Shown here in pieces: positions 102 to 16,841 of a DNA stretch of 64,000 nucleotides. The notes under the pieces were generated by a model that saw only the letters and a list, made by a program, of their open reading frames with translations, did no database searches and was not told where the DNA came from. Source of the stretch: Chrysemys picta bellii. Its lineage: Eukaryota. The position numbers and the translations under genes were made by a program. Numbering within the stretch: position 1 is the stretch's first letter; every line of letters starts with the position of its first letter. The DNA lies in the NCBI RefSeq assembly GCF_011386835.1, contig NC_088802.1, positions 248,001 through 312,000 of the forward strand, read 5' to 3'.

Positions 102-3100
102 CGGTTCTCCAGGGAGCCCTCTGGGGCCGACCTCTCCATCGTCTCCCTGGGGGAAGAGAAAAAGGGGGTGAGGCAGAGAACGGGGAGGGGGAGCGAGCTC
201 AGCTCCCCCCGGCCATCCCTGCTCCCCAATTCCAGCTCCCTCTGCTCTCCCCACCTCCAGCCCCCTCCATCTCCCCATTCCCCTCAGCTCTCCCACATCT
301 CCCTCCCCAGGGAGCCACCCCAGCTCCCCTCAGTCTCCCTCCCACCCCCCAGACCCTCCAGTGAGCAGTTACTCACCCGCTGCCCGTCCTCACCAGGGGG
401 GCCTGGGATGCCCTGGGAACCCGTCTCACCCTGCAGGGACAAAGCCTTGGATCAGCTGGGTGGGGAGCCATGGGGCTGTGTACGTGGGATGCGCAGGGCC
501 TTTGGGGTGACTGTGTGTGTGATGGGGGCACAGCTGCATGTGCCGTGGGGGTGAGTGTGACTGAGTATGTAATTGCAGGGCGGGGGGTGCATCGCAAATG
601 TGCCGGATGTGTATGTGTTCTGCTGTGAACTGTGTGCAGCTGTGTTGTTGTGTGCATGTGCACAATTGCAGGTGTGCTGTGTGTACTATGTTTGTGTGAC
701 TGCACGTGTGTGGGGCTGTGTGTGAATGCAGTGGCTTTGTGTGTATTGTTGCGTATCTGAGTGTGTGCACAGATAGTTAGGAGAACGTTAGCGTGTGCGT
801 GGTTGTGTCTATGTGACTTTGTGATTGCACACACCTGGCTGCACAAGTGGGAGAATGTGTATGTACTGCGCGGTGCGCTGTGTTTGTGATGACACGGCTG
901 TGGGGATGTGCGTGGTTGTGCATGTGTAGTGTTCCGCGTGGCTGTGGCTGTGTGCGTTGCGCAGGGTGCGTAAGACTGTGAGTAGATTCTGAGGCCAGAA
1001 GGGCTCGGCTGCCCCTGTGTCGCTCCGGACGTCGGTCTGTCCCGAAACAAGCCCTGCTGGAACTAGACTGTGTATATCTGTGTGTGTAGATACGCTTGTG
1101 TGTGCTGGTAGGTGGCGTGTGACTGCGAAGGGGGGGCAGCGGCTCTGGCTGTGTGATGTACAGTTGTGTGTGTATCAATGCTCAGAGGGGGGTGCACAAT
1201 TGTGTAGCGCACACATGGGCTGGCCAGAACTGACCGCGGGGTGGCCCCATCTCTCAGGGAGATCCCAACAGTGCACCAGGACTGTCCCCCACCACCACCA
1301 CCACCACCACGAGGCGCCCGGCCAACGTGACTCACCCTGTACCCCTTGTCCCCCGGCAGCCCCGGCAACCCGTCAAAGCCTCGGTCGCCCTGCGGAGAGA
1401 AGCACAGAACAGCTCCCTGAGCCAGCACGCCCCAGCTGGGGAGACGCCCCTGCAGGACCCCCTCCCAGCCAGGGCACCCCATCCCCGGGAGGTGGGCTGC
1501 AAATCCCCACTGGGAACGAGGGTGGGCCCCCGGGGATCCCTGTTCTGAAGCAGTGATGTTCCCACACGGAACGGGAGGGTCGCTGGTTGAGTTAGTGGGT
1601 CTCCAACGTGCTAGAGTGGATCTCTGGTGCACGAGGATCACCACGCTGCGTGGGTGGGTTACTAGGACAGTGCCTCACCAGGAGATTCATGTACGCACTG
1701 AGTGGATCACTCACACAGCAAATGACTAGATCGCTAATGGATCGTCATGCTGAATGAGTGAGTTACTAGAAGAGTGGATTACCCCTGGATTCATGCACAC
1801 TCAGTGGATAACCAGCTCAGGTGATCTAGTGATCTTCAATGCCTTCACCACATGGACTATTGGTGGATTCGCAGGAGCAGTGACCTAGTGGATTACCAGC
1901 AACGCAATTTACTGGATCAACACTGCTACAGTCCAGTGGGTCACCAGAGCAGTGACCTACTGGATCATCTGTGGATCTACAGTGCTGGGACCTAGTGGAT
2001 CACCAGCCCAAGGAGGCCAGCTCACACCCAGTGCCTTGTCCACAGAAGCCATTACCCGTTACCTTAACGCCATGCTCCCCAGGCATCCCCCGAGCACCAT
2101 CGGCTCCAGCACGACCCTGCCAGAGAGACACAGAGACGGGGTGAGAGGAGGCTCTCCGGGCACAGAGGCTCTCCTGCCCCCACCCTGGGGTATCCCCGTC
2201 AGGATCCACACACTTACCCTCCTTCCAGGCTTCCCCGGGGGGCCAGACAGGCCCTGCGGCCCGCGGGGTCCCTACAGAGAGAGAGGGAGGGAAAGGGTAA
2301 GCAGACCTTCCCCCACAAGCAGCATGGGGGGGGGAGAAAATAAATAAATAAATGGAGATATCCCATCTCCTAGAACTGGAAGGGACCTTGAAAGGTCATC
2401 AAGTCCAGCCCCCTGCCTTCACTAGCAGGACCAAGTACTGATTTTGCCCCAGATCCCTAAGTGGCCCCCTCAAGGATTGAACTCACAACCCTGGGTTTAG
2501 CAGGCCAATGCTCAAACCACTGAGCTATCCCTCCCCCCCAAGAGGGAGAAATGCGGGTGGGAGCTCTCCAGGGTCCGAGGGGCTAATGGGGATTCTGGGG
2601 TTCAGATCAGGGTTAGGCTCCAGGGTGGGATGGGGCTCATGGGGTCAGACGGGGGGGTTCTTTCCTAGTGTCTGAGGGGTTAATGAGGGGTGGGGTGGCA
2701 GAGAGCGGTAACAAAGGGTAAACAGAGGGGCGGGCGGCAGTGACCCCGGCTCTGGGTCAGGGTTATAAGTCACAGGAGCCTGTGATCCAAACAGCCCAGA
2801 AAAAATCCAGCGTCGAACCAGAGGTCAGAGGTCACTTGCCAGCGTCAAGGGTTAGACATCACGGTCAGGGGCCACTAATCGTGAGTTAGGGTCACAGACC
2901 AGAGGTGGGGGTCACGGGTCATTCACCCTGGTCAGGGGCCAATGATTGGGAGCCAGGTTCAGAGACCAGGCTCATGGGCTGGAGAGAGGTCAGGGTGAAG
3001 GGGTCAGAAGTCAGCAACTGGGGTCAGGTTCCTGAGGTTACAGTGAAGGGATCAGAGGTCAGTGACGGGGTCATGTCCATGGGTTGGAGCAAGAGTTCAG

Positions 3101-6100
3101 GGCAGGAGCAAGGGGTCAGAGTCGGGGTCGTGCTGGGCTCCAACCCCCCGATCTCCTGCCAAGGCCAAGCCTGTTACCTGGGGTCCGAAGTCTCCGGCTT
3201 CCCCCTTCAGCCCGGAGCCCCCTGGCTGCCCCTGGAATGAGACAGCAGAGCAGAGGGGGTTACATGGGGGCAGCACATGGGCTCAGGGCCACAACCCTCC
3301 CCACAATCTCCCCAGGGTGCTGGGACCCACAGAACCCGGGGACGTGAAATTCCAGTGACACCAGCCCCCCGCCCCACACCCTGCCCCACACCCCAGGGCA
3401 CTGGGACCCACAGAACCTGGGGACATGACATTCCAGTGACACCAGCCCCACAGCCCCACACGCCCAGAGCATGGGAAACACAAGGACATGAAGCCCTAGT
3501 GACTCCAGCACTCCATGTCCCACCCCAGGGACAAGCCGACATGTCCCCCTAAGCCCTGACACCCACTCCCACATCCCCAAAGCACCAGCCATCAAGCGAT
3601 GCCTCCTCCCAACCCCGGCCCAGAGCAGGTACCTACCAGGGGCCCAGGCCGGCCGGTGTATCCCATGGGTCCTGGGGGGCCACGCAGGGCCATCTGGGGG
3701 GGAGAGAGGAGAAGGAGAATTAGACTGCAGCAAGCCAGGATCCCAGCCAAACACAGAACAAAGCAGGGAATAAGGACTGGGACCAGAACAGGGCTGAACA
3801 GGAAACATGGGGATCCAGAAAATTACTGGGGTTTGGGGGGTAAGAACGGGGTCCCAGTTGGGGATCTAAGAGGGGAATAAAACATGAATTTATCAGCATC
3901 GATAGACTGGAGGGAAAACAGCGACACTCAGTGTTCTAGAAATGAAGCTACAGACTTCCTGGGGTTTTAGGAAAAAGCACATTGTGATGTCAGCAGGATT
4001 CTAGAAGGAGATAAGCATGGTCCTAGAATTAGGGTTCTAGAGGGGTGACAAGTTGGGGCCTCATTGGAGTTCTAGAACAGGGGAAACTGTGATTTGCTCC
4101 GCACTCAGGAGGGTTAATAAGGTTTGAGGTTTGAAGGGAAGATAAATCAAATCACAGTCTTAAGGCAATGATCCATGATAGTCTTGGGGTTCTAGAAATG
4201 CAGTAAAATGTTTTGTGACACTTGTAAGGGTTCTAGGTGGGCATAGATTGTAACCCCCGTGGTTCCAGGAGAGCAGTCAATTGTAATCTCGTCCTGGTTC
4301 TAAAGGGCAGTACACTGAGATGTTGTTGAAGAGCTACTTAACCATAAGGTTATAAATGAACCTAGAAGGATAAGAAACGGATCTGCTGAGATTCTAGAAA
4401 GGTGACAAACCATTATCCTGCCGTTCTAGAGTGGCAGTAAATTGTGACCTTGGGGAAGCTCTGGAAGGGCACTGACCACTATTTGGTATGGAATCTTAAA
4501 GAACAATAAAAGAGTGACCCTTAACATGGTTCTAGAAAGGTAATAAATTGTGATCCCACTGAGGCTCTAGAAAGGTGACAACCCATTGGTATCTGGGTTC
4601 TCGATTACCAAATTTATCAGGGCTCCGGGGAAGAAAATAAGGCAGGATCTTTTCCAGGCTCCTTGAACCCCCTACCCTGCCCAACTCTCCCTGCCCTGTC
4701 TCCATCTGGACTTACCCGGGCTTGCTGTAAGATGGCCTGCGCTTGTGCCTCTTGTGCTGACACCGCAGGCCCCTTGTCTCCACCGCTGTTCCCAAACCGG
4801 AACTGGAGGACGAACGACAAACCTTCAGCTGTGAAAATCACACTGCCGCCATCCCAGAACTCACGCCGCCATCCCAGAACTGGGCTCCTGGGAGACATGC
4901 CCGGAGCCCTTCCTAGAGCTCTAGATCCCAAGGCAGGCTCTGTCCTTCACACTTCACGACGGGGCGGGAGGGGGGGGCAGATCACATTGCCAGAGCTCCC
5001 CTGGCCTGTTCTAGACTCCCAGAGATTTACTGCAACCTATCCAATTCCGGGCTGCATTCTTGGTATTCCCCTTTCTCGTCTAGACTCACACATATCCACT
5101 GCATGCTCTATGGTTCTAGGTAATACTACTAGAGTGCCCATTTCTGTTCCATACTCACATAAGCTCACTGTATATCCTTGCTAGTTTCAGGTAATGCTAT
5201 CAGGGTTCACCCTTATGTTCTAGACTCCCATAGACTCCCTGCATCATCTTTGGTTCTAGATAATGCTATTAGCACTAGCCTTTCGGTTCTCAACTCACTG
5301 TACTCTCCAGTTCTAGATCACACTACGAGAGCTCTCCCTTCTATCCTAAATTCCTATATCCCTATTATATTATCTACATTTCTAGAGAACAGCACCAGAG
5401 TCTCCTGTCCTGTTCTAGATTCCACGCAGGCCCATCCACTGTGCAATCTCCAGTTCTAGATCACAGGTTTTTCTTCTGATCTAGACCTAGACATCTTCTC
5501 TGGTTTTAGGTAATATTTGTAGAATCCATCTCATCTGTTACAGATTTATACTCTGACATACCTCTGTTTTAGGAGTTACTCTCTGGGTTCTACATTCAAA
5601 TAGCCCCACTACATACTAACCAGGACTAGCTAAGTGAGTCAGCCTCCTCTCTCCCATATCTTAGATCCTCACAGATCCACTCTACAATCTTCAGTTCTAG
5701 ATCACAGTACTAGAGTTCCCCTTTTTGTTTTAGACTCCAGCTGACCCACTGTATCCTCCCCAGTTCTAGGTAACACCATCTCTGTTCTCTCGTCCCTTTT
5801 AGATCCCTACAGGTCCATCTATCCTCTCTGGTTCTAGGCCATACTATCAGAGTTCCTCTTGTTTTACTCTAGACCCTGCAGGCCCACTGTATAGTCTACG
5901 GAATTAGGTATCTGAGTTCTTGAGCCCCACAGACCCATTGTATCACCTACTAGTTCTGGATACTGCTAGCTGAATCCCCAGGCCTGCCCTAGACTTCCAC
6001 AGACACATCATATTATCCCTAGTTCTAGGTAACACAATGAGAGTCTTCCCTGATTTATTCAAGACCCACAAACCCACATTATCCTTTCTGGTTCTAGATC

Positions 6101-9100
6101 ACACAATTAATTCCCCTGGTTTTATTCCAGACCTGAGAGCCCCCACCTTCCATACACTTCCTTGATCCAGCTCCCACAAGTATTTCTTCTAGTTTTATTC
6201 TAGATCCCACAGAGCCACCCCAGTTCTAGGTTACCCTATCAGCACCTTCCCCTGCTGTTCTAGACCCTAATCAGCCTATGTTAGCCCATTCCATTCCAGA
6301 CTGCAGCAGCCCCATCATTATCCATCAAACACCTCCTTACTCACAGGGAGCATGAGAGACGTGCCAGGAGGTCCAGGCGTCCCATCCGAGCCAGGGAGAC
6401 CTGAACGGCCAGGAGGACCCTGTTGGAGAGAGAGGCAGAGCGGGAGGTTATTGCATGGGGGGGGTCCGATCGTCCCCTCAGACAGTGCTGCTGCTGCCCC
6501 TGCCCTTCTCAGCACCCACAGCTCCCCCAGCGATGCGCCGATCTCCCCCCACACAGTGCCAGTCTCATATTCTCCCAGCACCCTGACACACACTGACCCT
6601 TGCCAGGATCTCTGGTCTATCCCCAAACACCCCAGGCCATCGGCGCTGCATATGCACACACGTGCACAATCACACACGCTAACGCATGCACACTCCCAGG
6701 CACTCACACGCACAGCGCCTTCCCCAGCCAAGGGGGCACAATGACATCCCACCCCAGCGCACACTCGCGTCTCCCCGTGCAAACACCCACTCACTCCTCC
6801 CTTGGAAGGGGGACCGCGGTCTCCCCCAGAGCTGATGCTGGACCCACAACTCCTGCCATGGGGCCAGGTTCCAGCTCGCACTCACCCTCTCGCCAGGATC
6901 TCCTGTGGGTCCCGGGGGGCCCTGTGTGCCCGGTGGCCCTGATATGCCCTGAGGAAACACATGAGAGACGCACAGTGAGGTTAATGCACCAGCAGGGGGA
7001 TCTGCCCCCGGCCCCAGAGCATCCCCCAGAACTCCCTGGACAGACAGACAGACAGGCTCTTACCGCAGGTCCCTCAGGGCCGGGGGGGCCCTCCACCAGC
7101 ATTCCCTGCAGAACAAGAGGCAGAGAACAGGGTTACGCCAGCGACAGGCCCGGGTGGGGCGAGGGCACAGCGGGCGGGGGGGGGGGAAATAGAGCCCCCA
7201 GCTGAGGAGGCCTTGGGCAGAGACAGCCCCGGCCATGAGGTGCCCTAGAGAGACTGGGGACTGCCCAGGTGAGTTTGAAAAGGGGGAGGATCTCCTGGCT
7301 CATCCACACCCCTCGCCCACTCCCCCCATCAGGAGAGAGGGCCATGGACTGTGCACACATGACTGTGCACCCTCCCACGCACACAGACATATACTAACCC
7401 AAACATGCAAATACGGTGGCATGCATGCACCAGGGTGTGCAAATACACACACACACACGCCATGGTGTGTAACAGATGCACATGCATGGGAACTAACACC
7501 TACATGCAAACTAGATGTGCAAACACAGGCACTCGCAAATACACATTTGCACACGCATACACAATTGTGCACAGGAACAGGTGCAAGCACTGACAGACAG
7601 ATGCAAATGTGAATCTGCATGCAGGGGCCTGTGCAAACTCATGCACACACTCAGAGGCACATGCAACATATGTGCACACACATGATTTTTCACACTTAAG
7701 GTGTGACAATACATATATGCTTGTTCACACAGGTGCGTGCAGACACGCACACATGTCCCATCCTGCCATGCGCACCCTGCCCCCCCCGCATACATACACT
7801 CGTCTGTGCCTATCATCAAACTACAGATCACTACGTCCATCGCACACACACAACCCCGGGGGGGCTCCAGGCCCAGGTGACCTGTGACGGGGCATGCAGG
7901 GCGCACTGATCCCTGAATAGGGCAGGGGCTGAGATAGGACAGGAGGCGCTGGGGGGGCTCTGTCCCATGCACAGCAGGATATCCTGCTCCTGCCACAGGG
8001 TGCATTGGGGGGCTGCATGGGGTGGGGCACCCCAGGGCCTGGACTATGCAGAGATGGGCAACATACAGGCACGAACAATGGAGGGGCTGGTGGGAGCAAT
8101 TGGTCTCCCCCAACCCATCGACGCAGGGACCTACCGGTTCCATGACAGCCGGCTCTCCCTTCTCTCCTTTGTAGCCTCTGACTCCGTGCACAGCCTGAGG
8201 GTAACACACATATAACCGCAAAGAGGGGCCCGGTCAATATAATGCACCCGAGGCCCCACTCTGGCACCCTCCCAGCCCTGCAAATCCCAGCTCCCACACC
8301 AGGAGGCAGGGCTCATCCAGCACCACTCAGCCGCACCACCCCGGGCTCTGTTAACGGAGGCTCCCTATCCCCCATGGTCTGAGGAAAGGTGGAGTAAAGT
8401 CTGAGTCAAAACTGGTGCAAGGGCTCAGTGAAAATGGAGCAGGGTCCAAGCGAGGTGCAAATAAAAGTGGAGCTCATCTCACTAAATTCGGAGTAAAATA
8501 GGACTAAAGTTTGAGTAAAACTGGAGAAAGCTCTGAAAACGGAGCAGGATCTGTGTAAATGTGGAGTAAAGTCTGAGTAAAAATGGAGTACACATGGAGC
8601 AAAAATCTGCATTTAAATGGAGCAGGGTCTGAATAAAAGTGGAGTAAAGGTGAAGAAAATGCAAATCAGGGTCTATGTAAATGTGGAGTAAAGTCTGAGT
8701 GAAACTGGAGTAAGGTCTGCATTTCCGTGGAGCAGAGTCTGTGTAAATGTGGAGTAAAGTCTGAGTAAAGCTAGAGTAAACCTGGGGCAGGTTCTGTGTA
8801 AGGCCCCAGGATTTTGTCCCAACCCTTCAGTTACCCTCCTGGGACCTAGGCAGACACGGCTGCTGTTTCTCATTGGAGCCCATCCTCACCCCTAACAGCC
8901 CCCTTGGAGCCTCTGGGTCTGTTGAGTTAGGATGCTTTGATAGCTCTGAGCTAATCAATGCATCGCGATCCACAGCGGCTCTGAACGGAAATGGAGGACA
9001 GGTTACATCACCAGGTGAAACACACCCCAGGGGAGGGGGTCATGGGGAGGAGAGATTTAAAGGCCCACATCTGGAGATGCCCCTGGCCCTAAATCCCCAG

Positions 9101-12100
9101 CCCCACTGAGATGGCAGCGTGGGGGGAAGGGAATTACCGCACCCCTTTGGGGGGTTATCCCCCCAAATCGGTAATTGACACCAGCGCTGACAATACTCGG
9201 GGAGGTGGGTGAATAACAGAGATGGCTGTACATGGGGATGACATCACAGGGCGTAAGATGACATCACAGAGTGGGGATGCCCTGGCGGGTTAGGGGCATT
9301 GCCAAGGCAGAGGATGTCAAGGTTACAACATCCGGTGCGATGCCATCGGGGCATGACATGCCCATCTCTGAACATACGAGGTGTGGGAGAGGGTGCTGAT
9401 GTCACTCCGAGCAAGAAGTGACCTCACAAGAGAGGAAGCGCATCACAGGAAATGGAACGGCGGAGGGAAAGTGACACAATGATCAGTGAGGTGCAGGGAA
9501 GGACTGCTAAAGACAGGAAGCGACCACCACACTGGACAGGAAGTGAAGGCAGTGAACAGGAAGTGATGCCACACTGGACAGCCATGACCCCTAGGAGGCC
9601 AAGCAGGAAATTACCATGACACAACAGTAAATGCTGACAGGGATGCCACAAACAAGGAAGTGACACCACACAGGAAGTGCCAACATGGCAAACAGCAATG
9701 ACACCATGAAAAGCAGGAAGTGACACATCAACAAACAGGAATTAACACATCAGAAAGCAATACCACGGCAAACAGGAAGTGATGCCAGGACACACCAACA
9801 AATGGCCACAAACAGGAAGTGACACCACAACGATAACAACACAGAGCCATGAATGGGAAGTGACATCTCAACAAACAGGAAGTGACACCATGAGACACCA
9901 ACACAGGACCACAAACAGGAAGTGACACCACAATAGGAAATGCCGCCAACAAAAGACCACAAACAGGAAGTGACACCACAACAAACAGGAAGCGACCGCC
10001 GAAAGACCATCCAAGAGAGGCCAGCAGGAGGAAGGGCCCGAGGACACATCCCCCGTGCCCCACTTACGCCTCCGTTCTGGGGGGTCTCTGCGGAGAGCAC
10101 GGGCCCCAGCTCTGATGGCTCGGCTCCCTCGGGAAAGTCCTTATAGACATACTCGTACTCCTGCCCCGTCACAGCTGTGTCCTCCCCCGTCACGTACTCC
10201 TCCACAAGCACCTCGTCCTCACCCGGAGCGGCAGGGGGCGGGCTGGGAGCCTCCTGCCCCACGGGATGGGGGAGAAGGGGAGAATGAGAAGAAACCCAGC
10301 AACGCATTAATGCCCAGCACGGCGCCTACTGGGAGACAGGCTCAAGGAGATGTGACGAAACTGGATCCCCCAGACCTCCTTGACTCCCAGCCCCCTCTCT
10401 CCCAGCTCTAACCCGTTAGATCCCATTCTCCGCCCAGAGCTGGAGATAGAACCCAGGAGTCCTGACCCCCAGTCCCAAATCCTCAGTCCTTTCCCCACAG
10501 ACCCCTATCTCTGCCCCCTGGAGCCTCTCCCCCAGGGTCTCCATCTCTCCCATCGTGGGATCAGCACAGAGGCAGCTCTCGGGGGACCAGCCCTGAATTG
10601 CATGGGGAGGCTTTAAGGCCCCACCCCACTGAGACAGACAGTGGGGCTGTGGGAACTAGGGGGGAGCTAGACCTCACCCTGGAGCCAGCTCAGCCCTCTG
10701 CGCCTTCCCATCCAGCCCCTTAGCCACCCCTCAGTCCAACCCCAGGGCGGTTACCTCAGCCCAGGGCTCCCAGGGGGAGTGGGGAGTCACCTCCAGCCCC
10801 GTTGTCTCCTCCCAGTAGTCACCATCAGGGTCCTGGTCAGGGGGTAGGGTATAATCCAGGTACTCGCCAGCCCCCCAGGGCTCCTCTGTAGGGGACAGCC
10901 CCACATCCTGGGCCAGGGGCGGGGGGCGGGTTCAGCAGTCACCAGGGCCAGGGGGGAACAGGGTTGGAACAGCAGTCATGGGGGCAGGGGAAGAAAGATN
11001 NNNNNNNNNNNNNNNNNNNNNNNNNNNNNNNNNNNNNNNNNNNNNNNNNNNNNNNNNNNNNNNNNNNNNNNNNNNNNNNNNNNNNNNNNNNNNNNNNNNN
11101 NNNNNNNNNNNNNNNNNNNNNNNNNNNNNNNNNNNNNNNNNNNNNNNNNNNNGATAAACATGCATAGGGATGGATAGACAGATGGACAAACAGGCAGATT
11201 ATGCCCAGGGATGGATGGATGCAGTGGACGAACGGAAGTGCATGGAGATGGATGGAGATACAGGCATGAGGACGGTTTGACAGATATGCAAAGGGATAGA
11301 TGGATTAGAGGAGAGAGAGAAAGAGGACAGAAGTATTAGTAGGTTATTCTTGTTCTCCCCCCTGCCCTGGGGAAGGGGCAGGGACAGCGGAACTGGATTC
11401 ATCCCGGATCGTTTTCCCGGACACATAGAGACAAACCGATCGCTGATGTAATCGCGCCCCCCTGCAGCGCCCCCTGCCAGGGAGCGACTACCCCTTGTCA
11501 CTCAAGCGGGACTTGGGGTGTCCATTCACGGGAAAGAAGGTGCAAGATAAATAAACACACAGAGAAAATGTAAAGGAAGTGGGACATGGGACCTTTCCCG
11601 TCTAGGGGGCACTCCCTCCCATCCAGCCCCAGGGCAGGGACTGGCTGGCTCAGGGGGGCAGGGAATGGGACACAGGACCTTTCCCCTCTAGGGGGCGCCG
11701 GCTCCAATCTGGCCCCAGGGCAGGGACTGGCTGGCTCGGGGGGCAGGGAATGGGATTTGGGGCCTTCCCCACATTCCCCATCTGCTGGTTTATTTATGTT
11801 GCCAAGGCGTTTCCCGAATGGCCCCATCACAGACAGACAAACAGACACGAGCGAGACGCACAGATTGGGGAGGGAGGGGATGGGGTGGGGGGGAGCATGC
11901 TCCTCCCCATAGATCTCAGATCGTGCTGCCCCCTCAGGGGGGTGCCCAGCACCGATCTGGATGCCTCGCTCTTGCTCTACCTGCTGGTAGCCGTTGCCGT
12001 GTTTCCTGGGTGCGCCGGCGCCAGCGTAGGCCTTGCCCCCCGTCTGGGCCTTGCCCAGGGCATTTTTCACGGCCAGGTGTTTCCCCCAGCTGCCATCTTG

Positions 12101-15100
12101 GCGTTGCCAGGGGACTTTGCGTTGCCAGGGGACTTTGTGTTGCCGGGGGATTTGCCGTTGCTGGGGGATTTGCCGTTGCCGGGGGACTTGGCGTTGCCGG
12201 GGGATTTCCCGCCGCCGGGGGCTTTGCCGTAGGCTGGGGCCGTGCTCATCAGCTGCTGCCGTTTCTGCTGCTTGGGCGCCGGCTTGACGGGCGCCTTGCG
12301 GCCCGGCCCAGCGGGTTTCTGGTGCCGCGACGGCGAGGAGGAAGAGGATGGATGTGATGAGGGTGAGAATGAAGATGGCAGCGACACACACACAGACCGG
12401 GAGCCGGGCACAGAAAGAAAACACAACACAGACGGCATGAGTTCACGGGGAGCAGGGGTGCAGGGGCTGCTGCGAGGACTCCCTGGTGTACGGAGCACCC
12501 CACATCCCTCGGGGTCACCCCAAACCCCCTCTGTCCCTGGGAGCTTGTTACATTCAGAGCACCCCGAATCTCCAGGGGTCACCCCGGACCCTCTCCATCC
12601 TGGAGACCTGCATACATACAGAGCACCCCAAATCTCCAGGGGTCACCTCAGACCCCCTCTTCCCCTGGGGACCTGCATACATACAGAGCACCCCAAATAT
12701 CCAGGGGTCACCCCAGACCCCCTGTGCCCATGGGGACCTGGATACATACAGAGCACCCCAAATCTCTAGGGGTTTCCCCAGATCCCANNNNNNNNNNNNN
12801 NNNNNNNNNNNNNNNNNNNNNNNNNNNNNNNNNNNNNNNNNNNNNNNNNNNNNNNNNNNNNNNNNNNNNNNNNNNNNNNNNNNNNNNNNNNNNNNNNNNN
12901 NNNNNNNNNNNNNNNNNNNNNNNNNNNNNNNNNNNNNNNNNNNNNNNNNNNNNNNNNNNNNNNNNNNNNNNNNNNNNNNNNNNNNNNNNNNNNNNNNNNN
13001 NNNNNNNNNNNNNNNNNNNNNNNNNNNNNNNNNNNNNNNNNNNNNNNNNNNNNNNNNNNNNNNNNNNNNNNNNNNNNNNNNNNNNNNNNNNNNNNNNNNN
13101 NNNNNNNNNNNNNNNNNNNNNNNNNNNNNNNNNNNNNNNNNNNNNNNNNNNNNNNNNNNNNNNNNNNNNNNNNNNNNNNNNNNNNNNNNNNNNNNNNNNN
13201 NNNNNNNNNNNNNNNNNNNNNNNNNNNNNNNNNNNNNNNNNNNNNNNNNNNNNNNNNNNNNNNNNNNNNNNNNNNNNNNNNNNNNNNGGACTTGCTACCT
13301 CCCTTCCAGGCTGCTGCCCCCTCTCCGCACTCTGCTGGCTTTGGGTCCCCCCATGCTGCCACCCTAGGCCCCACCCAGCCCCCCGCCCTTCTCTTCCCCC
13401 ACCCTGCTGCCCCCTCCTCCCCCACTCTCAGATGCCCCAACACCCCCCTGCTGCCATTCTCCTCCCCCCCCCTTTGTTGGGCAGGAGAGACGGGGGTGGG
13501 GGAACCACAGAAGGAAAAAATGTTTCTGAGAGGGAAAGTTCAGGCCTGGGGGGGGGGCTCCTTACAGCCCCCCCAACCAGGGCTGGGGGGGTGATATCCC
13601 TCCCTACAGCAACCCCATATCTGCCCCTCCCCCCAGCCATTCCCAGTGCCCCCTCACTATGTCTGTCCCCCCCAGCCAGTTACTACTCCCTCCGTCTGTC
13701 CCAAGGGACCCCCCCTTCCTGCCCCCCCCCCGGGTTAGGTGAAGGTGATGGGGGGAGGGAGATTAAAATGTTACACAGCGGGTGTGTGAAGAAACACAAC
13801 TACACAATGGGCACAGAGAGACACCACTACACACTCACACCAACAACCCCACACACACACACCAGGGGGAGACACAACTATACAACTGTCTATACACACA
13901 ACCTGGGGGGATGGACACAGATACACAACTATATGCACTCACACACACAACATACACACACACACCCCTTGTGGCAGGAAACACAAGTACACAACTGTAT
14001 GCAACACACGGAGCTATACACCTGCACACGCACACACCCTACTGGGAGACACAACTGTACAACCCCCCGCCACACGCACACACACAACACAGGGCCAGAG
14101 CGGTGCGGACCAGGCACATGCACCCCCCGAGTCCACCCCTCCCATCCCGGAGTCAACCCTGTGAAGGGAGAAGGAGGGTGCAGGGGGGATGCAGGAGACA
14201 CGGAATGAAGAATATGGGAACAAGGGGGGACAATGGGGGAGCAGGGGGGCACAGGGGGCTGAGCAGAGGAGGGGGGGTGCAGTGGGGAATGGAGGGGTGG
14301 GGGTGCAGTGGGGGGCACAGTGGGGGAACGGAGGGGTGGGGGTGCAGTGGGGGGCGCAGTGGGGGAACGGAGGGGTGGGAGTGCAGTGGGGGAACGGAGG
14401 AGTGGGGGTGCAGTGGGGGGTGCAGTGGGGGAACGGAGGGGTGGGGGTGCAGTGGGGGGCGCAGTGGGGCCCTGCACTCACTTCCCCCGGGGTTATAAAT
14501 CCCCCCACACTCAGGAGAGGCGGCTCTGGCTCAGTGCAGGCCGGGCCAGGCAGGGGGTCGGGGGAAGCTGCAGCCCAAAGATAAATAAACCCCCGCGCCC
14601 AGCCCAGCGCACACTCCTGCCCTGTTCCCAGCACAAAGAGCCTGTGTTTGTGCAGGGCCCGGGGGGCGCAGGCCAACACGGGCAATGGGGGCTCTGGGGG
14701 GCACAGGCCAACATGGGCAATGGGAGGCCCCGGGGGGGCACAGGCCGACACGGGCAATGGGAGGCCCTGGGGGGCACAGGCCACACGGGCAATGGGGGCT
14801 CTGGGGGGCACAGGCCACACGGGCAATGGGGGCTCTGGGGGGCACAGGCCAACATGGGCAATGGGGGCTCTGGGGGGGCACAGGCCAACATGGGCAATGG
14901 GGGCTCTGGGGGGGCACAGGCCACAAGGGCAATGGGGGCTCTGGGGGGGCACAGGCCACAAGGGCAATGGAGGGTCTGGGGGGCGCAGGCCACACGGGCA
15001 ATGGAGAGTCTGGGGGGCGCAGGCCACACGGGCAATGGGGAACCCTAGGGGCACAGGACACACGGGGCAATGGGGGCTCTGGGGGGCACAGGACACGCGG

Positions 15101-16841
15101 GCAATGGGAGGTCTGGGGGATGCAGGCCACATGGGCAATGGGGGTCCCTGGGGGCACAGGACACGCAGGCAATGGGGGACCCTGGGGGCCACAGGACACG
15201 CGGGCAATGGGGGACCCTGGGGGCGCAGGACACATGGGCAATGGGGGGCCCTGGGGGCCATAGGCCACGCGGGCAATGGGGGGCCCTGGGGGCGCAGGAC
15301 ATGCGGGCAATGGGGCAAACCCGGACAAGTCGAGGGGGCGGATCCCCCATTTTCAGTCCAAGCCAGTCCGGGCGGGGGGAGGCTGGATAAACAGGGTTGG
15401 ATTTATTGCACCCGAGAACCCCCCTGTGCCCCCAAGCCAGCAATTCCCCCCTCCCAGAGCCCCCCAATACCTGAGACATCCCCACTCTGCCTCTGATGCC
15501 AGAGAAACCCCCACAGCCCCCCACTGCCAAAGATCCACCCCCAAGCCTGGGGGAGGCTCCCCCATAAGAAGTTGGGGGGAGCTAAAGTTGGGGGTGGAAT
15601 AAAAAGGAAGGACTGCACCCCCCGAATTCCTGACCTCTCCCTGCCCCCCACTCCATGACCCCTTCATCCAGTTCTCGTTGCCCTAAAATCTCAGCTGTCC
15701 CTAAACCCCCAAATTCTGGCCCCTGTTTTCAGATCCCCTGAATTTCTGACCCTCCTGCACCCTTAACCCCCTGCTCCCCAGTGGCTGTCCCCTTGTCCCC
15801 CCATGGCCCCAGTGCCTGTCCCTAGGATCTGTCAGTGCCTGCGATGCCCAGGGGAGAAGATGCTGTCTCTGCCACATCACCCCAGCTGGCACCCCCAGCC
15901 CTCCCCGGCACCTGCTGGCAGCTCCGCAAAGCACAATGGGGGGGCTGGGTGACAGGCGGGGGACACCCCTCCCTGGGGCACCTGGCGCGGGCCTCAGCTG
16001 CCACAGCTGGGACCTGCCTTCCCAGTCCCCCACCCATCTCCCCTCCGGAAACCGGGCACCCACCCACCCCCGGCCTGCCCTGAGTCTCCACTCGGGCACC
16101 CAGACCCCGGACCCGGCACCCGCCTGCCCCCCACACCAAATCCGGGCTCCAGGGGACCGTGCCAGAGCCACAGCACCTCTGCCCCCCGGCGCTGATACCC
16201 CCCATGCCAGCCCTGGGCTGGGCACTGACCTCCTACCGCAGCCCCTGATCCCCCCCATCCAGGGCACGGACACCCCCCGCCACTGCGTCCCAGAGACAGA
16301 CAGACACACACACAGCTCCCGGTCCCAAACACAGAGACCCCTGTGCCCTCCGTGCGTCCCCGACACAGACACCCCCCAGCACCCCCCTGCGCCCCAGACA
16401 CCCCCAGCACCTCCCTGCGCCCCGACAGCCCCCCGAGCACCCCCCTGCGCCCCGACACAACCCCCCCGGACCCCCCTGCGCCCCGACAGCCCCCCGAGCA
16501 CCTCCCTGCGCCCCGACACCCCCCCCGGACCTCCCTGCGCCCCCACACAACCCCCCCGGATCCCCCTGCGCCCCGACAGCCCCCCGAGCACCTCCCTGCG
16601 CCCCGACAGCCCCCCGAGCACCCCCCTGCGCCCCGACACACCCCCCCCGGACCTCCCTGCGCCCCCACACAACCCCCCCGGATCCCCCTGCGCCCCGACA
16701 GCCCCCCGAGCACCCCTGCGCCCCGACACAGACCCTCCCCCGCCCCACTCCCCCCCCCGTACCTGCCCGGGCGCACAGAGCGGGCAGCAGCAGGAGCAGG
16801 GGCAGCAGCCCGGGGGCCCGGGGGCGCCTGGCGCGGGCCAT
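102..16841 (-). CDS. COL11A2: Collagen alpha-2(XI) chain, 5' part; the gene runs off the left edge and TSPN exons 2-5 are not in the sequence
   Basis: Exons on - strand: 16841-16763 (signal peptide [26 protein letters not shown]), 12318-11981 (basic exon, see findings), 10907-10755, 10253-10068 (acidic, ...[10 protein letters not shown]), 8194-8135 ([14 protein letters not shown]), 7105-7064, 6948-6886, 6419-6345 (GTSLMLP), 4802-4716 (FRFG...[14 protein letters not shown]), 3693-3637, 3231-3178, 2271-2218, 2116-2063, 1389-1336, 430-377, 146-102. Gly-X-Y exons are 45/54/57 nt with AG/GT ends. Peptides match mammalian COL11A2 and the gene neighbours RXRB. Confidence 0.96.
440..1210. repeat. Degenerate (TG)n-rich intronic tract
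   Basis: Visible TG/CA simple-sequence composition; similar tracts at about 7350-7860, 13780-14100, 18990-19580 and 21700-21930. Confidence 0.7.
2341..2539 (-). mobile_element. tRNA-derived SINE with CR1-type 3' tail (turtle polIII/SINE type)
   Basis: On - strand: A box TAGCTCAGTGG (2527-2517), B box GTTCAATCC (2482-2474), CR1-like tail GACTTGATGACC...GGTCCCTTCCAGTTC, then an (ATTT)n end. Confidence 0.88.
8380..8800. repeat. Degenerate tandem repeat (AATGTGGAGTAAAGTCTGAGTAAAACTGGAG-like)
   Basis: Recurrent GGAGTAAAGTCTGAGT blocks in the COL11A2 intron between 8194 and 10068. Confidence 0.75.
9510..9995. repeat. Degenerate tandem repeat built on AAACAGGAAGTGACACCAC
   Basis: Nine CAGGAAGTG copies counted between 9537 and 9972. 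Confidence 0.8.
10755..10907 (-). CDS. COL11A2: COL11A2 variable-region acidic exon ([19 protein letters not shown]...EPWAE), 51 codons, phase 0-0
   Basis: cccag|GAT acceptor and GAG|gtaacc donor; 153 nt open; acidic and Tyr-containing like the mammalian variable-region exons. Confidence 0.8.
11000..11152. other. Assembly gap (153 N)
   Basis: Run of N. Confidence 0.99.
11981..12318 (-). CDS. COL11A2: Putative Lys-rich alternative exon of COL11A2, about 113 aa with six KSPGNx repeats; needs +1 nt in the C-run 12083-12087 to be in frame
   Basis: Pyrimidine tract plus caccag|AAA acceptor and CAG|gtagag donor. Repeat variation is mostly synonymous in the KSPGN frame. Confidence 0.7.
12788..13287. 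other. Assembly gap (500 N, probably a placeholder size)
   Basis: Run of exactly 500 N, flanked on the left by a tandem repeat (12480-12787). Confidence 0.99.
14660..15320. repeat. About 35-bp minisatellite (GGGGGGCACAGGCCACACGGGCAATGGGGGCTCT) in COL11A2 intron 1
   Basis: Roughly 19 tandem units. Confidence 0.9.

What the first reader, a model, noticed from the sequence alone, without database searches (positions are those of the whole stretch)
11981..12318. Strongly basic COL11A1-exon-6b-like cassette with KSPGNx repeats in COL11A2
Seen: a phase 0-0 exon candidate that, after the 1-nt correction, encodes 113 aa with 18 K, 3 R and no D or E. It contains six 18-nt repeats (12100-12207) whose variation includes synonymous aaa/aag and ccc/cct changes. 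It lies 5' of two acidic exons. Established: mammalian COL11A2 exons 6-8 are acidic, whereas the paralogue COL11A1 has a basic alternative exon 6b at the equivalent position. Inference: a retained ancestral, repeat-expanded, glycosaminoglycan-binding isoform that could matter in cartilage or shell.
Basis: partly seen in the sequence, partly recalled or inferred. Interest (0 to 1): 0.75.

Follow-up and report, generated by a model that had tools for sequence, protein, structure and literature searches.

The report
Basic alternative exon in turtle COL11A2
Turtles splice a previously unassigned, strongly positively charged 113-residue exon with KSPGN repeats into the otherwise acidic N-terminal variable region of collagen XI alpha-2, giving this chain the kind of acidic/basic isoform switch so far described only for its paralogue COL11A1.

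Summary
Contigs of three public runs (three organism codes) all carry an extra base in the C5 run at 12083-12087. The true exon is therefore 339 nt: 113 codons, phase 0-0, 18 K, 3 R, no D/E, pI 11.2.

It is a real exon of COL11A2 on the minus strand. Its donor at 11981 is joined by GT..AG introns to acidic exon A (10907) in one run and to acidic exon B (10253) in another. A third run holds a 5-kb spliced contig that has A and B but not this exon.

The exon, its splice sites and its frame are kept in Mauremys mutica and Chelydra serpentina. Repeat number changes in 18-nt steps. pN/pS is 0.35 in the KSPGN frame and about 1 in the other two frames.

RefSeq has the Mauremys copy as a separate "neurofilament heavy polypeptide-like" gene. 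I take that to be a mis-assignment.

Homology to COL11A1 exon 6B is not shown: no alignment, no KKK motifs, and a different order relative to the acidic exons. Ancient origin and glycosaminoglycan binding remain untested inferences. The scan had not noted this exon before.

The parts
11981..12318 (-). Basic cassette exon of COL11A2. It is 338 nt as assembled and 339 nt in reality, encoding 113 aa (KPAGPGRK...KSPGN x6...GNGYQQ), phase 0-0.
   Evidence: Searches give the sequence and translation. One search shows the donor joined to exons A and B in RNA contigs, and contig ends at 12320 at the acceptor. Searches give the orthologues. One search gives pN/pS 0.35 in this frame only.
12083..12087 (-). 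Homopolymer run (C5 on +, G5 on -) where the assembly lacks one base. The real sequence has six.
   Evidence: table 4: 'put in behind 12082: C' in every contig covering it (X1 3.8/3.8, X11 109.3/109.3, X14 5.24/5.24). Chelydra has G6.
12103..12210 (-). Six 18-nt units encoding G/A/T-K-S-P-G/S-N. A seventh, degenerate unit (AKMAAG) follows.
   Evidence: TRF period 18, 12098-12230, 7.4 copies, 84% matches; unit table. About seven units in Mauremys (one degenerate) and eight in Chelydra.
12319..12365 (-). 3' splice site: pyrimidine-rich tract (ctcaccctcatcacatccatcctcttcctcctcgcc) followed by cag.
   Evidence: RNA contigs of X1 and X11 stop matching at 12320. That is expected if the upstream exon ends in AG, as Chelydra exon 5 does.
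11975..11980 (-). 5' splice site, gtagag.
   Evidence: table 5: joints 11980->10906 (X1) and 11980->10252 (X11), both CT..AC on the + strand, which is GT..AG on the gene strand.
10755..10907 (-). Acidic variable-region exon A. 153 nt, 51 aa, net -14, itself skipped in some transcripts.
   Evidence: Joints (11981->10907 and 10755->10253). P0016 (Chelydra COL11A2) holds its tail.
10068..10253 (-). Acidic variable-region exon B. 186 nt, 62 aa, net -14.
   Evidence: Joints. Present in P0001 and P0016.
8135..8194 (-). Next COL11A2 exon ([20 protein letters not shown]), the start of the minor helix.
   Evidence: AG/GT borders. Matches P0016.

Best explanation
This is an alternatively spliced, in-frame cassette exon of the turtle COL11A2 gene (collagen XI alpha-2, minus strand). 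It lies in the intron between exon 5 (the end of the N-terminal TSPN/Npp domain) and the acidic variable-region exons. When included, it inserts a 113-residue peptide directly after the Npp domain. The peptide is probably disordered, has no acidic residues, and carries a lysine about every sixth residue (six KSPGN units). Inclusion shifts the summed charge of the variable-region exons from about -28 (A+B) to about -7 (basic+A+B) or +7 (basic+B). SHOWN: the sequence, the 1-nt assembly error, use of the donor, joining to exons A or B, the existence of a skipping form, conservation of frame and splice sites in three turtle families, and frame-specific purifying selection. INFERRED: the acceptor is joined to exon 5. 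By analogy with COL11A1 isoforms A and B, the exon acts as a charge switch on the part of collagen XI that projects from the fibril surface, changing its affinity for polyanions (glycosaminoglycans, acidic matrix phosphoproteins, mineral ions) and/or neutralising the neighbouring acidic segments, and so modulating fibril growth or propeptide processing. The tandem 18-nt array grows and shrinks by slippage, always in frame. RefSeq's separate 'neurofilament heavy polypeptide-like' gene in Mauremys is this exon wrongly assigned.
For:: GT..AG joints 11981->10907 (X1) and 11981->10253 (X11). In X11 the exon contigs have word depth around 100 against 11.5 for the intron contig (rough). X14 has a 5075-nt spliced contig with exons A+B whose 114 upstream letters do not lie on the basic exon. 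An extra C behind 12082 appears in all three runs; the only true relative among 1.84 billion representative proteins is XP_044838785.1 (Mauremys mutica). It reads intron read-through, then this exon (117 aa), then exon B, in frame; the Chelydra contig has exon 5 ending ...CCC GAG| in phase 0, the exon orthologue (372 nt, 124 aa, open, AG/GT), then exons A and B of a gene that NCBI names COL11A2 (KAG6920732.1); the two loci are collinear at 85-90% identity; pN/pS is 0.35 in the KSPGN frame (Fisher p 0.005) against 1.38 and 0.93 in the other frames, and nonsynonymous divergence is 6.6% against 13% in flanking introns (p 0.0045); pI 11.15, net +21. (PMC8008188, PMC11800387): the COL11A1 precedent of acidic 6A (pI 3.34) versus basic 6B (51 aa, pI 11.9) isoforms, which differ in interactions.
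Against: The acceptor junction to exon 5 is not seen directly. Exon 5 is missing from this window, so only the contig ends at 12320 speak for it. The runs are recorded as 'RNA? (a guess)', and their RNA nature rests on the spliced joints themselves. The joint in the window's own species (X1) is a single low-depth contig with 24 nt on its short side. Overall nucleotide identity of the exon between Chrysemys and Chelydra (91%) is not clearly above that of the introns (83-91%). In the Chelydra assembly the last ~15 codons are frameshifted, and the frame is kept only by a donor 2 nt upstream, which may be an assembly error. Tissue, inclusion level and any binding activity are unknown. There is no canonical heparin-binding motif.
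Confidence: 0.8

Rival explanations
1. The exon is a lineage-specific exonisation of an intronic minisatellite in turtles. It is spliced in as tolerated noise and adds a harmless disordered stretch to an already variable, disordered region, with no function of its own.
For: Exon nucleotide identity is no higher than in the neighbouring introns. The variable region is poorly conserved in general (PMC7558312). No relative was found outside turtles. The Chelydra tail is frameshifted.
Against: pN/pS is 0.35 only in the coding frame, and nonsynonymous divergence is half that of the introns. The frame, both splice sites and the phase are kept in three families. All repeat-number changes are multiples of 18 nt. 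In run X11 the joint from this exon has a higher contig depth than the A->B joint (rough).
Confidence: 0.12
2. One reading: the exon is the orthologue of COL11A1 exon 6B, inherited from the single pre-duplication clade-B collagen gene, lost from mammalian COL11A2 and expanded by repeats in turtles.
For: Both are lysine-rich cassette exons with pI 11-12 in the first part of the variable region, after exon 5, in paralogous genes. From my own knowledge, pro-alpha3(V), a third paralogue, also has a basic segment in its variable region.
Against: There is no sequence similarity to rat 6b and no KKK triplets. The order differs (basic before acidic here, 6A acidic before 6B in COL11A1), and the size differs (113 vs 51 aa). 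No COL11A2 representative from any other vertebrate matched the exon in an all-against-library HMMER search. That is weak evidence, because isoforms are collapsed into 50% clusters and the peptide is of low complexity.
Confidence: 0.2
3. RefSeq's view: an independent small gene ('neurofilament heavy polypeptide-like') nested in a COL11A2 intron.
For: XP_044838785.1 is modelled this way. Pfam DUF1388 (KSP-type repeat) matches the peptide at E 7e-10. The Chelydra annotation also calls a separate 196-aa gene at this place.
Against: The model's first 43 residues are the in-frame translation of the polypyrimidine tract and intron upstream of the acceptor. Its C-terminal 66 residues are COL11A2 exon B. 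Only PF07142 is on record for it, with no intermediate-filament domain. The exon is in phase with exon 5 and with exons A and B.
Confidence: 0.03
4. Alternative frame: the exon is read in the frame that is open across all 338 assembled bases (…[19 protein letters not shown]…), giving an Arg/Gln/Pro-rich peptide with no need for a sequence correction.
For: That frame is open from 12442 to 11501 as assembled, and it is also open in Chelydra.
Against: Reads from three runs and the Chelydra assembly show that the missing base is real. Exon 5 ends in phase 0, which sets the KSPGN frame. The Mauremys model reads the KSPGN frame into exon B. pN/pS in that alternative frame is about 1.
Confidence: 0.01

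Closest known systems
COL11A1 exon 6B (basic isoform B of the collagen alpha1(XI) variable region)
   Same: It is an alternatively spliced, in-frame cassette directly after the Npp/TSPN-coding exons of a clade-B fibrillar collagen. It is lysine-rich with pI 11-12, and it sits beside acidic alternative exons, so splicing flips the charge of the fibril-surface domain.
   Different: No detectable sequence similarity. It has regularly spaced single lysines in KSPGN repeats rather than four KKK triplets. It is 113 aa rather than 51. It lies upstream of the acidic exons and can be co-included with exon A, whereas 6B lies after 6A. It is in a different gene (COL11A2) and is known only in turtles.
Mammalian COL11A2 alternatively spliced exons 6-8 (Tsumaki & Kimura 1995; Zhidkova et al. 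1995, as listed in the references of PMC7558312)
   Same: Same gene and same region. These are phase-compatible cassettes used in many combinations. Turtle exons A and B are of this acidic kind.
   Different: From my knowledge of those papers, all the described mammalian exons are acidic and no basic exon has been described for COL11A2. The held paper library gave none either.
Neurofilament heavy chain KSP repeats / Pfam DUF1388
   Same: A repeated K-S-P motif, with a Pfam match above the curated cut-off. This is the source of the RefSeq name.
   Different: The resemblance is compositional only. The peptide is an exon of a secreted collagen, there is no filament rod domain, and the intracellular proline-directed kinases that act on NF-H would not normally meet it.

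Membership tests
COL11A2 variable-region cassette exon | Lies inside COL11A2, between the last Npp/TSPN exon (exon 5) and the minor-helix exons | tested here: met
   Downstream exons A, B, the minor helix and Gly-X-Y exons lie on the same strand. [quoted passage not shown] In the collinear Chelydra contig, exon 5 lies 3.5 kb upstream of the orthologous exon.
COL11A2 variable-region cassette exon | Spliced in frame to COL11A2 exons in RNA | tested here: met
   Donor side: GT..AG joints to exon A (X1) and exon B (X11), and the Mauremys model reads exon + exon B. The acceptor side is only inferred, from contig ends at 12320 and from exon 5 ending ...GAG in phase 0.
COL11A2 variable-region cassette exon | Length a multiple of three with phase 0-0, so it can be included or skipped | tested here: met
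   339 nt after the base shown by reads, and 372 nt in Chelydra.
COL11A2 variable-region cassette exon | Both inclusion and skipping forms exist | tested here: met
   Inclusion in X1 and X11. The X14 5075-nt contig has A+B with 114 upstream letters that are not on this exon. This rests on contigs only, so no quantification is possible.
COL11A1 exon 6B-type basic exon (homology) | Sequence similarity to exon 6B | tested here: not met
   BLASTP of the rat 6b peptide (47 aa, taken from PMC8008188 Table 2) against the Mauremys exon gave no alignment at E<=100.
COL11A1 exon 6B-type basic exon (homology) | Repeated lysine-triplet (KKK) motif | tested here: not met
   No KKK is present, and the only adjacent basic pairs are RK, KR and RK.
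COL11A1 exon 6B-type basic exon (homology) | Strongly basic composition (pI about 11.9) in the variable region after exon 5 | tested here: met
   pI 11.15, 21 K+R, 0 D/E. The comparison value comes from PMC11800387.
COL11A1 exon 6B-type basic exon (homology) | Position after an acidic 6A exon, used as an alternative to it | tested here: not met
   The basic exon is the first variable-region exon here. No acidic ORF lies between exon 5 and it in Chelydra, and it is joined to acidic exon A in X1.
Heparin/glycosaminoglycan-binding peptide | Cardin-Weintraub consensus XBBXBX or XBBBXXBX | tested here: not met
   The regex search found none. High net charge may still bind polyanions.
Heparin/glycosaminoglycan-binding peptide | Measured binding to heparin, HS or CS | not testable with these tools
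   This needs recombinant peptide and heparin-affinity or SPR measurement.
Neurofilament heavy polypeptide | Intermediate-filament rod domain and an independent gene | tested here: not met
   Only PF07142 is on record for XP_044838785.1. Its N-terminus is intron read-through and its C-terminus is COL11A2 exon B.

The most novel reading that the evidence does not exclude
The basic cassette is not a turtle novelty. It is the surviving COL11A2 copy of an acidic/basic charge switch that already existed in the single clade-B fibrillar collagen gene before the vertebrate genome duplications. It was kept as 6B in COL11A1 and as the basic segment of COL5A3, was lost or overlooked in mammalian and avian COL11A2, and is used in turtles for perichondral or dermal ossification, including the shell.
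Probability: 0.15. Interest if true: 0.7.

Novelty: new variant of a known kind. Interest (0 to 1): 0.5.

Why it matters
Collagen XI sets the diameter of cartilage collagen fibrils, and its N-terminal variable region is the part left exposed on the fibril surface. A charge-reversing splice choice has been studied only in the alpha-1 chain, where the basic 6B form is linked to sites of first mineralisation and to bone sialoprotein binding (PMC8008188). If the alpha-2 chain has an analogous but unrelated-looking basic cassette in turtles, two things follow. The acidic/basic switch may be a recurrent or ancient design feature of clade-B collagens. Turtle skeletal tissues may also carry collagen XI isoforms that current annotation hides, because the exon is filed under a spurious neurofilament-like gene in RefSeq. 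There is a practical lesson for annotation as well: a 1-nt homopolymer error and a 500-N gap break the COL11A2 model in this assembly.

Tried and rejected
(1) Alternative reading frame. The frame that is open across the assembled 338 nt gives an IPRQRQ-type Arg/Gln/Pro-rich peptide, which recalled to me the basic tail after the TSPN domain of mammalian alpha2(XI). I rejected it on four grounds: reads show the missing base, exon 5 sets phase 0, the Mauremys model uses the KSPGN frame, and pN/pS there is about 1.

(2) TSPN exons in the window. Motif scans found none, and blastn of the Chelydra contig finds nothing upstream of 12734.

(3) Full-length COL11A2 proteins of other vertebrates. The word search sees only proteins of 0.55-1.75x the query length, and three searches returned only P0001, P0016 and P0017. 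The one HMMER job gave a single true relative.

(4) The look-up of encoding contigs for the Mauremys protein returned 'not on record', so there is no Mauremys DNA.

(5) Pfam on exons A, B and piece 2 gave nothing. The DUF1388 hit on piece 1 I judge compositional. Pfam on a presumed RXR ORF and on Chelydra exon 5 also gave nothing.

(6) Literature. Searches for a basic COL11A2 exon, for zebrafish variable regions, and for COL11A2 with turtle found no precedent. The review by Fang et al. 2012 on minor-collagen variable regions is not held.

(7) Run X4 was listed as holding 0.78 of the words but laid nothing on the exon. I take no conclusion from that.


Full report
**1. What is in the sequence.**

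The gene runs on the minus strand. Collagen Gly-X-Y exons lie at 102-8194. At 12318-11981 there is a stretch bounded by a good 3' splice site (a long pyrimidine tract followed by cag, 12365-12319) and a 5' splice site (CAG|gtagag).

Read from 12318, it encodes [36 protein letters not shown], then six xKSPGN units, then AKMAAGG. As assembled, it then hits a TGA. The rest of the exon ([34 protein letters not shown]) is in another frame.

Tandem Repeats Finder confirms an 18-nt array at 12098-12230 (7.4 copies).

**2. The 1-nt correction is real.**

I laid the contigs of four public runs on 9990-12480. Every contig that covers the place, in X1 (organism code A), X11 (code C) and X14 (code E), has an extra C behind +12082, in the C5 run at 12083-12087. 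The Chelydra serpentina genome has the same six G on the coding strand.

The true exon is therefore 339 nt: 113 codons, phase 0-0, with 18 K, 3 R, no D or E, pI 11.15 and net charge about +21.

**3. It is an exon, and it is alternative.**

The same call shows joints with CT..AC ends on the + strand, which is GT..AG on the gene strand:
- 11981 to 10907 (exon A) in X1.
- 11981 to 10253 (exon B, skipping A) in X11.
- 10755 to 10253 (A to B) in X11 and X14.

These joints also show that the runs, recorded only as 'RNA? (a guess)', contain RNA.

In X11 the contigs on the exon have word depths of 97-109, against 11.5 for the contig that runs from the exon into the upstream intron. The tool warns that depth is a poor measure, so I use this only as an indication.

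In X14 a 5075-nt spliced contig carries exons A and B. Its 114 further upstream letters do not lie on the basic exon, although X14 contigs do match that exon elsewhere. That contig is a skipping form.

Contigs of X1 and X11 stop matching the genome at 12320, two bases beyond the acceptor. One X1 contig goes on for 28 letters that lie nowhere on the stretch.

**4. Gene identity and the missing upstream exon.**

A HMMER search of the first 78 residues against 1.84 billion representative proteins found one true relative. It is XP_044838785.1 of Mauremys mutica, which RefSeq names 'neurofilament heavy polypeptide-like'.

Its sequence has three parts:
- 43 residues of in-frame intron read-through.
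- The orthologous exon (117 aa, about seven repeat units, one of them degenerate).
- COL11A2 exon B.

Its 14-kb contig (L001) is collinear with the window at 85-90% identity. It contains, in order:
- Exon 5 of the TSPN/Npp domain ([26 protein letters not shown]...QQRPARPE, ending ...CCC GAG|gtgagg in phase 0).
- The basic exon 3.5 kb further on (372 nt, 124 aa, eight repeat units, open, AG/GT).
- Exons A and B.

Exon 5 ends in AG. This explains why spliced contigs match the window two bases past the acceptor. It also sets the KSPGN frame.

The window itself has no TSPN exons. They probably lie in the 500-N gap at 12788-13287.

**5. Is the protein under constraint?**

Nucleotide identity between Chrysemys and Chelydra is 91% in the exon and 83-91% in the flanking introns, so the exon does not stand out at that level.

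The pattern of change does stand out. Over 97 alignable codons, pN/pS is 0.35 in the KSPGN frame (Fisher p 0.005), but 1.38 and 0.93 in the other two frames. Nonsynonymous divergence (6.6%) is half the intron divergence (13%, p 0.0045).

Repeat-number differences are whole 18-nt units.

One oddity concerns the Chelydra assembly. There the last ~15 codons are frameshifted by a 17-nt insertion and a 1-nt deletion. The frame into the next exon is kept only if a GT two bases upstream is used as the donor. I cannot tell whether this is real or an assembly error.

**6. How it probably works.**

The next two exons are strongly acidic (A: 51 aa, net -14; B: 62 aa, net -14). Including the basic exon therefore moves the summed charge of these exons from about -28 to about -7, or to about +7 when A is skipped, as in X11 and the Mauremys model.

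In COL11A1 the equivalent region stays on the fibril surface after the Npp is removed. The acidic 6A (pI 3.34) and basic 6B (51 aa, pI 11.9) isoforms differ in their interaction with collagen I, in processing, and in binding of bone sialoprotein (PMC11800387; PMC8008188).

By analogy, I propose that the turtle exon is a charge switch that changes which polyanions the alpha-2(XI) N-terminus meets, or that masks its own acidic neighbours. This is inference.

The peptide has no Cardin-Weintraub heparin-binding motif, no KKK, no N-glycosylation sequon and no Ser-Gly. Its lysines are spaced six residues apart over about 50 residues.

**7. Comparison with the known.**

The exon works like COL11A1 exon 6B. 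Membership by descent is not shown, for four reasons:
- BLASTP against the rat 6b peptide finds nothing.
- The hallmark lysine triplets are absent.
- The exon order differs: basic first here, acidic 6A first in COL11A1.
- I could not examine any non-turtle COL11A2 locus.

The Pfam DUF1388 hit and the RefSeq neurofilament name are compositional.

Paper searches found no description of a basic exon in COL11A2 of any species. From my own knowledge, the mammalian alternative exons 6-8 are all acidic (Tsumaki & Kimura 1995; Zhidkova et al. 1995).

**8. Verdict.**

It is unproven on origin and on function.

It is a new variant of a known kind of isoform switch, shown so far only in three cryptodiran turtle families, plus several coded close relatives that hold near-identical DNA.

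**9. Limits and rules followed.**

- I used one read-laying run of 2.5 kb, and it returned contigs only.
The corrected exon was built only inside scripts, for translation and for pN/pS.
- The N runs were left untouched.
- One short peptide (47 aa of rat Col11a1 6b) was typed in from Table 2 of PMC8008188 for the BLASTP.

Noticed in passing
window 12788-13287 (500 N) and 13288-16760: COL11A2 exons 2-5 (the TSPN/Npp domain) are absent from the window. This is so even though a signal-peptide exon candidate lies upstream and the variable-region exons lie downstream. Chelydra has exon 5 3.5 kb upstream of the basic exon, but nothing in the window matches it. The gap very probably hides these exons.
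   Followed up: partly
window 16841-16763, minus strand: Likely COL11A2 exon 1. It reads ATG...[26 protein letters not shown], followed by G|gtacgg. It sits inside very GC-rich minisatellite DNA (GQWGG/GRAGLDGG-type open frames on both sides).
   Followed up: partly
window 11000-11152 (153 N) versus L001 8117-9257: The small N run corresponds to about 1.1 kb of IHPS-type microsatellite-like repeat in Chelydra. No exon is visible there.
   Followed up: partly
window 10410-10493 and 11586-11753: Two intronic segments collect word depths in the thousands in all four runs, with many loose ends. They are dispersed repeats that are abundant in transcriptomes. The second is an 86-nt unit present 2.1 times (TRF 11575-11755).
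   Followed up: no
window 12162, 12169, 12172, 12173: Reads differ from the assembly within the third repeat unit. In X1 and X11, GGC AAA reads GCA AAG (G to A, K unchanged). In X11 and X14, AGC reads GGC (KSPSN becomes KSPGN). This is either allelic or species variation, or a collapsed repeat in the assembly.
   Followed up: no
L001 7250-7305 (Chelydra): The tail of the Chelydra exon is frameshifted relative to Chrysemys and Mauremys (a 17-nt insertion and a 1-nt deletion). A T insertion creates a GT two bases upstream, which would restore phase 0. This is either compensatory evolution or an assembly error.
   Followed up: partly
L001 1-2300 (Chelydra): A CR1/LINE-type reverse-transcriptase open frame lies in the intron upstream of COL11A2 exon 5.
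   Followed up: no
L001 4100-5900 and window 14000-15400: Both species have long proline-rich-looking tandem repeats in the introns upstream of the basic exon, open in all three frames. The units differ between the two species.
   Followed up: no
L002 (Logan contig of SRR18112698): A more distant species (65% identity over the intron) keeps exon B (…[31 protein letters not shown]). The contig does not reach the place where the basic exon would lie.
   Followed up: no
window 26123-26000, minus strand: An open frame reads [37 protein letters not shown], which I recognise as the ligand-binding domain of a retinoid X receptor. This fits RXRB lying head-to-tail upstream of COL11A2. Pfam gave no hit on the 150-aa stretch.
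   Followed up: partly
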